IMG/VR virus record: IMGVR_UViG_3300034101_004588
Location: 146,957 to 210,956 of that record
DNA: 64,000 bases
Strand: one strand, 5' to 3'
Part shown: positions 853 to 15,996 of the stretch, piece by piece
Layout of the letters: the number at the start of each line of letters is the position of its first letter
Numbering within the stretch: position 1 is the stretch's first letter
Notes under the pieces: model-generated
What the model saw: the letters and a program-made list of their open reading frames with translations, nothing else
Database searches by the model: none
Told to the model about the DNA's origin: nothing
Translations under genes and position numbers: made by a program

Positions 853-942
853 TGGGTCCACCCGGATTCGAACCGGGATCTCGCCGCCGTCGCGCAGCTT
901 CTGGTGTATAAGACCAGTGTTTTACCGTTAAACTATAGACCC
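853..942 (-). tRNA. tRNA-Ile(UAU) with long variable arm
   Basis: GGGTCTA/TGGACCC acceptor, CTGGT-CTTATAC-ACCAG anticodon arm, CCCGG-TTCGAAT-CCGGG T arm, ~23-nt variable region. Confidence 0.85.
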
Positions 943-10831: not shown

Positions 10832-10905
10832 TGGTAGGGAATGACGGTTACGCTCCGCCGACCCATGAGTGTAAATCACGTGTTTTACTATTAAACTAAT
10901 TCCCC
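10832..10905 (-). tRNA. tRNA-Val(UAC), atypical T loop
   Basis: CGTGA-TTTACAC-TCATG; T loop AGCGTAA; encoded CCA. Confidence 0.85.
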
Positions 10906-12165: not shown

Positions 12166-12239
12166 TGGTGCGGTGACACGGTTACGCTCCGAGGCCCGAA
12201 GTTTGGAAGACTCCTGTACTACTATTATACTACCACCGC
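12166..12239 (-). tRNA. tRNA-Gly(UCC), atypical T loop
   Basis: GGAGT-CTTCCAA-ACTTC; T loop AGCGTAA; encoded CCA. Confidence 0.85.
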
Positions 12240-12424: not shown

Positions 12425-12497
12425 TAGCGGAGGTGGGAGTTGAACCCACCTATAGATGCTTATGAGACACCCCAATTCACCGGAATTGTACTCCGCA
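12425..12497 (-). tRNA. tRNA-Met(CAU), possibly initiator
   Basis: GGTGT-CTCATAA-GCATC; T1:T72 mismatch as in initiator tRNAs. Confidence 0.85.
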
Positions 12498-14088: not shown

Positions 14089-14201
14089 TTTAGATTCGTG
14101 TTTTAAAGATCTTATTATTTTTAAACCAAAAAAATTTAAAAAAATTTCCAAAAAATTCACAATTAATAATACCTTAGAAAAACTTAAAATCAAGAAAATA
14201 A

Positions 14202-14272
14202 TCCCTCCTCAAGGTACTGCCCCTTGTTCTATCGGTTATCAACCGATTGTAATGCTACTATACTAAAGAGGG
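14202..14272 (-). tRNA. tRNA-Ile(GAU), atypical T loop
   Basis: ATCGG-TTGATAA-CCGAT; CAAGG-GGCAGTA-CCTTG. Confidence 0.85.
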
Positions 14273-14625
14273 GAAGGGCGTGTTTTTGTCCCGGAAACCG
14301 AAGGCGTCCCAACTTAATGTGTACCGGTTTTGTTATCACGCTAATCACCCGATTGGTGCGCATCAACATCATTGAGAGGCGTTCCGGGTCTACTATAATA
14401 TTTAGTTAGTATTTGAAGAGTTTTGCTCCGGAAATTGTCTCTTCTTCAACGAGACCGGGCATGGAGCCCGGAATCATCCGTCTAGCCTGTATTGAATCTA
14501 ATGCATGGAGTCATAGTTTTACGCAGCCTGACTCGTCCAGCAACAGTAAGAAAGTCCCAACACACTAACAGGCAAAGACTATCTTACCTGGATCTGGTTT
14601 ATTTGCTGCTGCCAGATCCGTTATC
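14273..14625 (-). ncRNA. unidentified ~350-nt multi-helix RNA (one or two RNAs)
   Basis: GC-rich, no credible ORF, multiple helices, promoter-like TTGCAA...TAGTAT just upstream. Confidence 0.5.
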
Positions 14626-14664
14626 TTTATACTATAGCAATATTTTATATTTGCAAATAGAAAA

Positions 14665-14741
14665 TGGAGTATCGGGTCAGACTTGCACTGACTAATGAAA
14701 GTTTTGCAGACTATCGCTTCGACTACTTTAGCTTCCGATAC
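14665..14741 (-). tRNA. tRNA-Cys(GCA)
   Basis: CTGCAAA loop; U73; CCA; T loop TGCAAGT. Confidence 0.88.
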
Positions 14742-14827: not shown

Positions 14828-14898
14828 TGCGAGTACTCGGTAATGCTCCGAGGCCTAAAACTTGGCAAGCTTCCGTTCTACTATTAAACTATACCCGC
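14828..14898 (-). tRNA. tRNA-Gly(GCC), atypical T loop
   Basis: TTGCCAA loop; CTCGG-AGCATTA-CCGAG. Confidence 0.87.
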
Positions 14899-15510: not shown

Positions 15511-15540
15511 ATTATTATTTATAGTAAAATAGAAAGGAAG

Positions 15541-15996
15541 AGGAGATGAGGGGACTCGAACCCCTGTCCAAATACTTTACACTAAAAGGTCTACATGTTT
15601 AAGTGTCTTTAGCATTTCAGCCACCATACGGTGACGAAGACTTTAGGCTGCTTGGCGACACTAACCGAGTTTTTAGTCTGCCTATAGACATTACCGCACA
15701 TCTACAAACGGAGGATTCTTTTTGTTACGTTGATACAGTCCACAATTCAACTACCTCTGCATATCAATATAACCTTAGAGGATCTGGTTATAAGGACCTT
15801 AGGCTGCTAAGAGATACTCTTCTTCAACACCACCGAGGAACTCGGAAGCATTGTTGAAGATATACTCGGCTTCAGCCAAGATAGCATCAGTATTATCTTC
15901 TGCTTTTAGTTTTTTGATCTGCTTTTTACGAGGCCAGCTGATCAACCTCGACATGCACTCTTAGTTTCAACTATTTGTCGAAACCAGTACATCCCC
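15541..15996 (-). ncRNA. ssrA: tmRNA
   Basis: 5' GGGGATGTACTGGTTTCGAC; 3' GGACAGGGGTTCGAGTCCCCTCATCTCC; G3:U70; tag frame 15903-15799 ending LLAA-stop. Confidence 0.95.

What the first reader, a model, noticed from the sequence alone, without database searches (positions are those of the whole stretch)
14273..14625. Unidentified ~350-nt structured RNA with its own promoter inside the tRNA array
Seen (minus strand): helices GGATCTGG/CCAGATCC, long-range GCCTGT/ACAGGC, GAGTCA/TGACTC, CCGGGC/GCCCGG and GTCTC/GAGAC. A CCCGGAA segment (14388-14382) can pair with either an upstream (14473-14467) or a downstream (14296-14290) TTCCGGG, suggesting a switch or pseudoknot. It is GC-rich in an AT-rich genome, has no credible ORF and abuts tRNA-Ile. 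Short pieces resemble RNase P RNA (UCCGGGCUCCAU, CCGGAGCAA, CUAGACGGAUG), but the GAGGAAAGUCC core is absent, so it is not called.
Basis: partly seen in the sequence, partly recalled or inferred. Interest (0 to 1): 0.62.

Follow-up and report, generated by a model that had tools for sequence, protein, structure and literature searches.

The report
New pseudoknotted phage RNA in tRNA array
The flagged stretch is a real non-coding RNA of a T4-like phage: a ~230-nt core held by five helices and three pseudoknots, from a family absent from Rfam 15, whose conserved palindromic loop suggests two copies pair with each other.

Summary
Window 14273-14625 (minus strand) is non-coding, about 45% G+C in a ~30% genome, and ends exactly at a tRNA-Ile(GAU).

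It has two parts:
- A ~230-nt core (14393-14622).
- A ~120-nt 3' extension (14273-14392).

I found about 45 distinct relatives of the core in uncultured phage and metagenome contigs, nearly all inside tRNA arrays on the tRNA strand. Covariation supports helices P1-P5 and three pseudoknots: 85% of cells paired against 70% in shuffles, 0 of 500 shuffles as high. Cognate strands also pair better than non-cognate ones for every helix.

An 18-nt loop always carries UCCGGA or UCUAGA. The tree needs about five switches between them, and no intermediate was seen. The same signature was used to support intermolecular kissing loops in OLE and GOLLD RNAs.

The 3' end is made in different ways. Sister clades carry a variant type-P1 twister ribozyme; others have a tRNA or a terminator-like hairpin. 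This window has an abiF-like hairpin, a second hairpin and then tRNA-Ile.

No Rfam family matches the core. The RNase P-like strings are chance, and the proposed CCCGGAA switch is not supported. Function is unknown; I favour a processed, trans-acting, self-pairing structural RNA.

The parts
14393..14622 (-). Conserved core of the RNA family (P1-P5 plus three pseudoknots)
   Evidence: Model R1 scores it 164.2 bits, E 1.6e-37. It is the only copy in the 211-kb genome. Covariation.
14590..14619 (-). P1 hairpin (GGAUCUGG 14619-14612 with CCAGAUCC 14597-14590; 14-nt loop L1)
   Evidence: 90% of cells paired and 6 of 7 pairs changed on both sides. Cognate -10.8 against non-cognate -2.8 kcal/mol. Coordinates.
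14545..14588 (-). P2 (14588-14577 with 14556-14545), closing loop L2. L2 carries the 5' strands of PK1 and PK2.
   Evidence: All 7 pairs changed on both sides. Cognate -8.9 against non-cognate -3.1 kcal/mol.
14485..14573 (-). PK1: GCCUGU (14573-14568) with ACAGGC (14490-14485)
   Evidence: 99% paired, with CG<->UA changes at two pairs and UA/AU/CG at a third. It was not part of the model that made the alignment. RNAalifold picks it independently.
14407..14567 (-). PK2: UAGUG (14567-14563) with UACUA (14411-14407); it crosses PK1
   Evidence: 92% paired, with GC<->AU at column pair 92:319. Permutation test 48 of 5000.
14503..14541 (-). P3: GCUGGA (14541-14536) with UCCA-U-GC (14509-14503). Its interior holds the conserved AG(Y)(Y)A strand and the PK3 target.
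   Evidence: Poorly aligned by the model (57% paired). Cognate -7.9 against -5.6 kcal/mol, 0 of 5000 permutations. Hand comparison: UGGA:UCCA, UAGU:GCUA, AUGA:UCAU, GAUACU:AGUAUC.
14523..14609 (-). PK3: P1 loop GCAGC (14609-14605) with GCUGC (14527-14523)
   Evidence: 82% paired. Cognate -8.1 against -5.3 kcal/mol, 0 of 5000. Variants seen: GUAGGU:ACCUAC, CAUGAC:GUCAUG, GCGAUC:GAUCGC.
14449..14481 (-). P4: basal ACGG:UCGU (14481-14478 with 14452-14449) and apical CCGGGC-UCCAU-GCCCGG (14471-14455)
   Evidence: Basal part 86% paired, apical part 83% paired with 5 of 5 pairs changed on both sides.
14415..14444 (-). P5 (GAAGAG 14444-14439 with CUCUUC 14420-14415) and its 18-nt loop L5 (14438-14421). 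The palindrome UCCGGA lies at 14432-14427.
   Evidence: P5 is 94% paired with 6 of 6 pairs changed on both sides. L5 centre: 28 UCCGGA, 17 UCUAGA, no other form. The tree needs about 5 switches, at least 3 forced by supported branches.
14347..14388 (-). abiF-like hairpin in the lineage-specific 3' extension
   Evidence: Rfam RF03085 scores 19.9 bits here, below the cut-off of 37, and 35.3 bits in the nearest relative L082. The outer stem covaries among the three relatives compared.
14278..14341 (-). Second hairpin of the 3' extension (GCGUG:CACGC outer, ACCGG:CCGGG inner)
   Evidence: RNAalifold on the window, L082 and L120 gives one compensated pair, G-C to A-U. No Rfam match.
14624..14639 (-). 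Promoter-like sequences: extended -10 TGcTATAGT (14639-14631) and T4-late-like TATAAAGA (14631-14624)
   Evidence: Read from the sequence. The consensus scan did not list it. Absent in the nearest relative L082.
14202..14272 (-). tRNA-Ile(GAU) abutting the 3' end; its 5' processing would set the RNA's 3' end
   Evidence: Rfam tRNA 43.6 bits. The same arrangement occurs in L082.
14668..14741 (-). Upstream tRNA (read as Cys, GCA)
   Evidence: Rfam tRNA 42.4 bits. ARAGORN calls tRNA-Cys at the same place in L082. The anticodon in the window was read by eye.

Best explanation
The element is the gene of a discrete, stable non-coding RNA of a T4-like phage.

**Shown**
- It consists of a ~230-nt core and a ~120-nt 3' extension.
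- The core belongs to a family that Rfam 15 does not hold. The family occurs in tRNA arrays of related uncultured phages, on the tRNA strand.
- The core folds into five helices tied together by three pseudoknots.
- One 18-nt loop keeps a six-base palindrome through repeated double substitutions.

**Inferred**
- The RNA is made with the phage tRNAs and trimmed like them. The 5' end lies 2-7 nt before P1, set by a promoter or by the end of an upstream tRNA. The 3' end is set by whatever follows. Here that is RNase P cutting at tRNA-Ile; in sister clades it is a twister ribozyme about 13 nt after the core; elsewhere it is an abutting tRNA or a terminator-like hairpin.
- The mature RNA acts in trans as a compact structural RNA. 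It pairs with a second copy through the palindromic loop, as a symmetric kissing complex.
- In this lineage the 3' extension adds an abiF-type hairpin, the motif of an RNA antitoxin. That suggests, weakly, a decoy role against a host abortive-infection toxin.

The biochemical function of the core is not known.
For: **A family exists**
- nhmmer, pattern and covariance-model searches give 59 hits, 45 of them distinct.

**Structure**
- 85.3% of cells are paired against 70.0% in shuffles, 0 of 500 as high. Slid controls give 38-52%. The covariation score is 0.349 against 0.154.
- PK1 and PK2 were not in the model that made the alignment.
- In the cognate versus non-cognate duplex test on 12 subgroups, 0 of 5000 permutations reach the observed value for 7 helices and 48 of 5000 for PK2.

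**Non-coding**.

**Context**
- The RNA lies on the same strand as flanking tRNAs in most loci, and often just after tRNA-Met.

**Ends**
- A TTGACA-17-TATGTT promoter ends about 8 nt before P1 in L007.
- tRNA-Cys ends 3 nt before the core in L082, and tRNA-Met 6 nt before it in L124.
- A twister ribozyme lies directly 3' in clades c-f.
- tRNA-His abuts the core in L136, L174 and L184.
- tRNA-Ile abuts the element here.

**Palindrome**
- The tree needs 5 switches, at least 3 forced by supported branches.
- The same reasoning supported intermolecular bridges in OLE and GOLLD (PMC12286853).

**abiF-like hairpin**
- The phage has no Abi_2 gene.
- The abiF motif RNA binds and neutralises AbiF toxin (PMC12373285).
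Against: - There is no expression evidence. The only RNA run found holds contigs that cover the tmRNA and tRNA pieces, and nothing between 14055 and 15561.
- No dimer has been shown. A palindrome could also be the binding site of a dimeric protein.
- The abiF score in this window is well below Rfam's cut-off. The motif occurs only in this small lineage, as a single copy, and not next to an abiF gene.
- The single-sequence fold is not better than shuffles.
- Processing by RNase P is inferred from position only.
Confidence: 0.6

Rival explanations
1. The core is a ligand- or factor-sensing domain that acts in cis. It would be a riboswitch-like aptamer or an allosteric partner of the adjacent twister ribozyme, controlling release or read-through of what follows.
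For: - The fold is compact and pseudoknotted, with many invariant unpaired bases (CGUUGA, ACAA, AAAA, UUG), as in large aptamers.
- In clades c-f it is fused directly to a twister, with about 13 nt between PK2 and the cut site.
Against: - What follows the core differs between clades: twister, tRNA, a terminator-like hairpin, or the promoter of the next gene.
- No conserved expression platform is seen.
- This window has no ribozyme.
- Several members are free-standing units between promoters.
Confidence: 0.12
2. The core is itself a catalytic RNA, either self-cleaving or acting on tRNA precursors.
For: - PK1 and PK2 cross each other in the same strand order as P1 and P2 of HDV-like ribozymes.
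- It sits in tRNA arrays, where theta ribozymes are thought to process tRNA trailers (PMC10879173).
- It has invariant unpaired bases.
Against: - No ribozyme model of Rfam matches, even at E up to 10.
- The region 5' of PK1 (P1, P2, PK3) is conserved and structured, unlike the leader of an HDV-like ribozyme.
- The first pair of PK1 is an invariant G-C, not G-U.
- Nothing here tests catalysis.
Confidence: 0.1
3. The RNA, or at least its 3' extension, is an anti-defence decoy. It would be an antitoxin mimic that neutralises a host AbiF/Abi_2-type HEPN toxin, as pseudo-ToxI does for ToxN.
For: - The hairpin is abiF-like, with the same stem-loop layout and the loop sequence CUCU(N)AAC in all four lineage members.
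- The phage genome has no Abi_2 gene.
- The abiF motif RNA neutralises AbiF in trans (PMC12373285).
- A T4-like cyanophage carries an abiF hit above the cut-off (PMC9964418).
Against: - The score is 19.9 bits here against a cut-off of 37.
- There is one copy, whereas the studied antitoxin has two.
- The loop has a 7-nt insertion.
- The host is unknown.
- The widely conserved core has no likeness to abiF.
Confidence: 0.2
4. It is a diverged RNase P RNA.
Against: - No RNase P model matches at E up to 10.
- A search for the two strings at close spacing found nothing in viral contigs.
- In relatives the first string is a covarying local hairpin, for example UUCUGC-GGAUU-GCGGAG, and the second is part of the palindromic loop.
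- There is no CR-I and no P4 pairing.
Confidence: 0.01
5. The conservation is at the DNA level: a protein-binding palindrome or a replication or packaging signal, not an RNA.
For: - The conserved six-base palindrome is flanked by ACAAAA on both sides.
- In some minimal relatives it lies just upstream of a -35 box.
Against: - G-U pairs are tolerated on one strand only, which fits RNA, for example 10-17 G-U cells in several pairs.
- Pseudoknots with compensatory changes over 80-160 nt are hard to explain in DNA.
- The element always has the orientation of the tRNAs.
- A twister ribozyme is fused in the same orientation.
Confidence: 0.03

Closest known systems
GOLLD and ROOL RNAs (large ornate phage and prophage RNAs)
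   Same: - Stand-alone structured RNAs of unknown function, encoded by phages, often in or next to tRNA islands. One GOLLD lies downstream of tRNA-Met.
- Multiple pseudoknots.
- GOLLD has a conserved 3' region and a variable 5' region, as this family does.
- Palindrome-preserving covariation in a loop supports intermolecular kissing (PMC12286853).
   Different: - This RNA is much smaller: about 230 nt against 580-800 nt or more.
- There is no sequence or model match.
- Self-association here is inferred only.
T4 rnaC and rnaD (species 1 and 2 stable RNAs)
   Same: Small stable RNAs of unknown function at the end of the tRNA cluster of a T4-type phage, on the same strand.
   Different: - They are 139 and 119 nt long.
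- Model R1 does not match them; the only hit near them scores 0.9 bits.
- So the likeness is one of context only.
Type-P1 twister ribozyme (RF03160)
   Same: - In sister clades the core is followed directly by a twister: the UAA cut site, P1, P2 and P4, and the L4 loop.
- E is 4e-8 on L122.
   Different: - It scores below Rfam's cut-off: 40.7 against 67.2 bits.
- By my reading of the published fold, the two twister pseudoknots carry compensating changes: CCC:GGG becomes CUC:GAG, and G:C becomes A:U.
- It is absent from this window and this phage.
abiF motif RNA (RF03085), antitoxin of AbiF
   Same: - The hairpin at 14347-14388 has the outer stem, the 3-bp inner stem and the CUCUCAA loop of the motif.
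- The nearest relative scores 35.3 bits against a cut-off of 37.
   Different: - It scores 19.9 bits here.
- The loop has a 7-nt insertion.
- There is a single copy.
- There is no abiF gene nearby or anywhere in the phage.
HDV-like and theta ribozymes
   Same: - Two crossing helices formed by adjacent 5' strands (PK1 and PK2).
- A phage tRNA context.
   Different: - No model match.
- A conserved structured domain lies upstream of the would-be cut site.
- The first pair is G-C, not G-U.
- The size is 230 nt against about 60 nt.
manA RNA motif of cyanophages (RF01745)
   Same: A ~200-nt structured RNA of T4-like aquatic phages. In phage S-CREM1 it lies about 100 nt upstream of an abiF hit (PMC9964418), the same order as core then abiF-like hairpin here.
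   Different: - The manA model finds nothing in this genome, even at E of 10.
- I could not compare the two folds directly.

Membership tests
RNase P RNA | Scores with an Rfam RNase P model (bacterial A or B, archaeal, type T, nuclear) | tested here: not met
   No RNase P hit at E up to 10 on 14150-14700 or at the gathering score on the whole window.
RNase P RNA | CR-I (GAGGAAAGUCC) pairing with CR-V to form P4 | tested here: not met
   CR-I is absent. UUCCGGG pairs locally with GCCCGG as a hairpin that covaries in relatives.
HDV-like / theta ribozyme | Nested double pseudoknot with crossing P1 and P2 | tested here: met
   PK1 and PK2 cross in that strand order. This is topology only.
HDV-like / theta ribozyme | Cut site at the first base of P1 with a G-U closing pair, and no need for upstream sequence | tested here: not met
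   The first PK1 pair is G-C in 33 of 33 sequences. P1, P2 and PK3 upstream of it are conserved.
HDV-like / theta ribozyme | Self-cleavage | not testable with these tools
   Needs an in-vitro assay.
Twister ribozyme, type P1 (RF03160) | Model match in this window | tested here: not met
   No hit at E up to 10.
Twister ribozyme, type P1 (RF03160) | Model match and conserved UAA, L4, T1 and T2 in the relatives' 3' domain | tested here: inconclusive
   Scores are 40.7, 36.9 and 30.2 bits, below the cut-off of 67.2, with E from 4e-8 to 7e-3. The pseudoknot partners change together. The motif is present in about 20 distinct sequences.
abiF motif RNA (RF03085) | Score at or above 37 bits | tested here: not met
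   19.9 bits in the window and 35.3 bits in L082.
abiF motif RNA (RF03085) | Hairpin layout: 6-bp outer stem, 3-bp inner stem, CUCUCAACGAU loop | tested here: met
   The layout is kept in the window, L082, L120 and L121, with compensated stems. The window has a 7-nt insertion in the loop.
abiF motif RNA (RF03085) | Lies upstream of an abiF (Abi_2) gene, usually as two copies | tested here: not met
   There is no Abi_2 match in the 211-kb genome, a single copy, and a tRNA follows.
GOLLD / ROOL | Match to the Rfam models | tested here: not met
   No hit.
GOLLD / ROOL | Homo-oligomer through kissing loops | not testable with these tools
   Only the covariation signature is available.
manA motif (RF01745) | Match to the Rfam model | tested here: not met
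   No match at E up to 10 in the whole genome.
T4 rnaC / rnaD | Homology to the T4 stable RNAs | tested here: not met
   Model R1, with filters off, gives nothing on T4 70908-71171.

The most novel reading that the evidence does not exclude
This is a new class of 'ornate' phage RNA. A ~230-nt triple-pseudoknot fold forms an RNA-only symmetric dimer, or a larger assembly, through a palindromic kissing loop. It is delivered from tRNA-array transcripts by interchangeable end-makers (twister, RNase P, terminator). It has an activity of its own, catalytic or toxin- or factor-sequestering, that helps T4-like phages during infection.
Probability: 0.35. Interest if true: 0.85.

Novelty: new member of a known kind. 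Interest (0 to 1): 0.72.

Why it matters
- **A candidate for structure work.** Complex RNA folds of unknown function are rare, and each has so far taught something new (GOLLD, ROOL, OLE, raiA). This one is small enough for crystallography or cryo-EM. It has three well-supported pseudoknots and a clean signature of self-pairing.
- **A link to phage tRNA arrays.** It sits in arrays that are increasingly seen as counter-defence loci.
- **Evidence that exact ends matter.** Different clades attach different 3'-end makers to the same core. That is unusual evidence that a discrete RNA with a defined 3' end is what selection sees.
- **A side finding on twister ribozymes.** It places them directly behind a structured RNA or a tRNA in freshwater-type T4-like phages. 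The proposed tRNA 3'-trailer processing by ribozymes has so far been described only for theta ribozymes of gut phages.
- **A testable hypothesis.** The abiF-like hairpin gives a concrete anti-defence idea to test.

Tried and rejected
- **Rfam.** Searched at gathering scores on the whole window and at E up to 10 on the region. Only tRNAs, the tmRNA, a weak abiF hit and a chance SorX hit came back.
- **blastn against GenBank phages.** Queried with the window's copy and with L087. No relative found.
- **Neighbouring 254-aa protein as an anchor.** No relatives.
- **RNase P-like two-string pattern in viral contigs.** Nothing.
- **Public RNA runs.** One metatranscriptome, contigs only. It covers tmRNA-like and tRNA pieces and nothing on the element, so it is no evidence either way.
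- **manA.** No match in this genome. The manA model and model R1 also found nothing in two cultured cyanophages, and the tool warned that an empty answer there shows nothing.
- **T4 rnaC and rnaD.** No match.
- **GTDB representative genomes.** 27 pattern hits, none a family member by the model. The best, in a Roseivirga MAG, reads as coding sequence.
- **Catalogue of 10,006 viral candidate RNAs (PMC10690425).** It may contain this motif, but no supplement is held, so I could not check.
- **A 2026 preprint on noncoding clusters.** It does not mention phage, twister or tRNA arrays.
- **My first windows for the duplex test.** They were badly placed and were replaced by alignment-column windows.

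Full report
**Setting.** The window is the last 64 kb of a 211-kb, ~99% complete IMG/VR virus record. Its virion structural protein is 55-74% identical to proteins of many uncultured contigs and about 60% identical to those of T4-like cyanophages of the Kyanoviridae. The phage is therefore a T4-like myovirus, with about 30% G+C. On the minus strand between about 12000 and 16000 lie many tRNA genes and a tmRNA at 15538-15996. The flagged stretch lies between a tRNA at 14668-14741 and a tRNA-Ile(GAU) at 14202-14272. Only Rfam sees these two; ARAGORN misses both.

**The observation.**
- The stretch is 44-47% G+C against about 30% around it, like the tRNAs.
- It has only short ORFs.
- Across 32 homologues no frame is kept open, and lengths fall in all three classes modulo 3.
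- Folding the single sequence is not better than shuffles (z = -1.1).

**Relatives.**
- blastn against GenBank phages found nothing.
- Taking 80 loci around homologues of the structural protein and searching them with nhmmer gave two diverged copies (L006/L007 and L008/L009), again inside tRNA arrays.
- From the three sequences I took the most conserved stretch as a pattern: CGTTGA, 6-9 bases, then ACAA..TC..GA..AAAA.
- Scanning viral contigs gave 27 hits, 19 of them true. Scanning metagenome contigs gave 81 hits.
- A profile and then a covariance model (R1, nested helices only) confirmed 59 hits, 45 of them distinct.
- The model finds a single copy in the window's own genome.
- None was found in GTDB representative prokaryote genomes or in two cultured cyanophages.

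**Structure of the core (window 14393-14622).** The coordinates of every helix are listed under parts.
- P1 is a hairpin.
- P2 closes a ~26-nt loop, L2.
- Two adjacent strands of L2 pair with distant partners. GCCUGU pairs with ACAGGC 80 nt downstream (PK1). UAGUG pairs with UACUA after P5, 150 nt downstream (PK2). PK1 and PK2 cross each other, and both cross P2.
- P3 follows. Its interior holds a strand that pairs with the P1 loop (PK3).
- P4 is a hairpin with a basal and an apical part.
- The invariant CGUUGA comes next.
- P5 closes the 18-nt loop L5.

**Support for the structure.**
- On the model-made alignment, 85.3% of cells are standard pairs against 70.0% in shuffles (0 of 500 as high) and 38-52% when partners are slid by 1-3 columns.
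- 34 of 49 pairs have changes on both sides.
- PK1 is 99% paired and PK2 92% paired, although neither was in the model.
- RNAalifold on a plain MAFFT alignment also picks PK1 and P5.
- P3 is poorly aligned by the model (57% paired). I therefore ran a test that depends little on alignment. For 12 subgroups less than 80% identical to each other, I compared the duplex energy of each 5' strand with its own 3' strand and with those of the other subgroups. Cognate pairs win for every helix. The permutation count is 0 of 5000 for P1, P2, P3, P4, P5, PK1 and PK3, and 48 of 5000 for PK2.

- P1, PK1 and the apical P4 are right.
- GTCTC/GAGAC is replaced by P5.
- GAGTCA/TGACTC exists only in some lineages and overlaps P3.
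- The three CCGG-containing segments each have a separate, covarying local partner. The proposed switch is therefore not supported.
- The strings shared with RNase P RNA fall in a hairpin, in L5 and in a joining strand. They are not kept in relatives. No RNase P model matches at E up to 10.

**The palindromic loop.**
- L5 reads ACAA-NN-UCYRGA-NN-AAAA.
- Among the 45 distinct sequences the centre is UCCGGA 28 times and UCUAGA 17 times, and never anything else.
- A tree built without the L5 columns needs five switches between the two forms. At least three are forced by well-supported branches.
- No other column of the RNA changes with them.
- Adjacent bases in one chain cannot pair with each other. 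This pattern is what a symmetric intermolecular kissing loop predicts. The same argument was used, and confirmed by cryo-EM, for OLE L9.3 and GOLLD L21a (PMC12286853).
- Here it remains an inference.

**Ends.**
- 5' side:
  - In L007 a TTGACA-17-TATGTT promoter ends about 8 nt before P1.
  - In L082, the nearest relative, a tRNA-Cys ends 3 nt before the core. In L124 a tRNA-Met ends 6 nt before it.
  - In the window a 48-nt A+T-rich spacer carries TGcTATAGT and TATAAAGA.
- 3' side:
  - *Clades c-f.* About 20 distinct sequences carry, about 13 nt after PK2, a type-P1 twister ribozyme. Rfam scores are 40.7, 36.9 and 30.2 bits, with E of 4e-8 on the local search.
    - These scores are below Rfam's cut-off of 67.2 bits.
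    - The differences from the consensus come in matched pairs. L4 changes from UCCCAAGC to UCUCAAGU, together with GAGGG to GAGAG and GC to AC.
    - By the published twister fold (my own knowledge), these are the partners of its two pseudoknots.
  - *L132 and L152.* A tRNA sits between the core and the twister.
  - *L136, L174 and L184.* A tRNA-His abuts the core.
  - *The L189 group.* A hairpin followed by a run of U follows the core. I read this by eye; the scan did not list it.
- A conserved core with interchangeable devices at both ends argues that the core is released as a discrete RNA.

**The 3' extension of this window (14273-14392).**
- It is shared only with L082, L120 and, in part, L121.
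- It starts with a hairpin that Rfam's abiF model scores at 19.9 bits here and 35.3 bits in L082, against a cut-off of 37.
- All four sequences keep the motif's layout and its CUCU(N)AAC loop, with compensated stems.
- A second hairpin follows (GCGUG:CACGC outer, CCGG:CCGG inner, one compensated pair). Then comes the tRNA.
- The abiF motif is the repeat unit of an RNA that binds and neutralises the AbiF (Abi_2, HEPN) toxin (PMC12373285).
- A T4-like cyanophage has an abiF hit above the cut-off, next to a manA RNA (PMC9964418).
- This phage has no Abi_2 gene.
- An orphan antitoxin-like hairpin in a phage suggests a decoy. The score is sub-threshold, so I treat this as a lead only.

**Wider family.** Several metagenome hits keep only the module UAGACGG-P4-CGUUGA-P5/L5, behind other 5' domains (L129/L139, L165, L167, L157, L188/L162). 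Some lie between repeated promoter-like sequences. So the 3' module is the most widely conserved part. My search pattern was taken from this module, so this picture is biased towards it.

**Function.**
- Shown: a conserved, non-coding, multi-pseudoknot fold in tRNA arrays.
- Inferred: co-transcription and trimming with the tRNAs, action in trans, and self-pairing through L5.
- Not known: what it does.
- I rank the alternatives below the main reading, for the reasons given under each: a cis-acting sensor, a ribozyme, and a decoy role for the extension. RNase P RNA and a DNA-level element are effectively excluded.
- Expression could not be tested. The single RNA run found holds only contigs and does not cover the element.

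**Novelty.** No Rfam 15 family matches the core. Four full-text paper searches and the one 2026 preprint I opened turned up no description of it. It may be among the unnamed candidates of PMC10690425, which I could not check. I file it as a new family within a known kind: stand-alone structured RNAs of phage tRNA islands, such as GOLLD, ROOL and T4 rnaC/rnaD. It shares neither sequence nor fold with any of them.

Noticed in passing
L122:910-973 (+), L149:48-111 (-), L132:964-1033 (-); also L087, L089, L095, L096, L104, L124, L152, L180 just 3' of the core: Variant type-P1 twister ribozymes in tRNA arrays of T4-like phage contigs. They score below Rfam's cut-off, but the partners of the two twister pseudoknots change together. 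In L132 and L152 the twister lies directly behind a tRNA. This suggests ribozyme-made tRNA 3' ends outside gut phages.
   Followed up: partly
window 15538-15996 (-): Phage-encoded tmRNA (Rfam 135 bits) with a ~160-nt insertion; ARAGORN does not call it in the window. The open frame ends in ...EEEYLLAA. Relatives carry tmRNAs with tags such as EAEYIFNNAAEFLGGVEEEMLLAA.
   Followed up: partly
window 14202-14272, 14668-14741, 14828-14898, 10835-10905, 12169-12239, 12425-12497 (-): Six tRNA genes are found by Rfam but missed by ARAGORN. The tRNA-Ile(GAU) at 14202-14272 has an unusual T-loop (GGGGCAGUACCUU), and L082 has the same one.
   Followed up: partly
window 853-942 (-): tRNA-Ile(TAT) of 90 nt, much longer than usual. 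It may have an intron or a long extra arm.
   Followed up: no
L129 and L139 (about 230 nt upstream of the L5 motif), L167: Minimal relatives with a different 5' domain lie between two copies of a promoter-like repeat, TTCTTGACTATCCACGGAATG. This looks like a free-standing RNA gene between tandem promoters.
   Followed up: no
L092:5300-5430 (-), L006:15550-15660 (+), L171, L177: In clade b the core is followed by another conserved ~110-nt stretch (GGGAUUAUCUCGUAAAAGGAGCCGAC ... GGUCGCGGGUAAACC) and then tRNA-Ser. There is no Rfam match in L101, the one member scanned. Its nature is unknown.
   Followed up: no
L094, L113, L174 downstream of the core: A small gene with a lipoprotein-type signal peptide (MKNIILSIVVVVALAACAS...) and its own promoter follows the RNA in clade g.
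   Followed up: no
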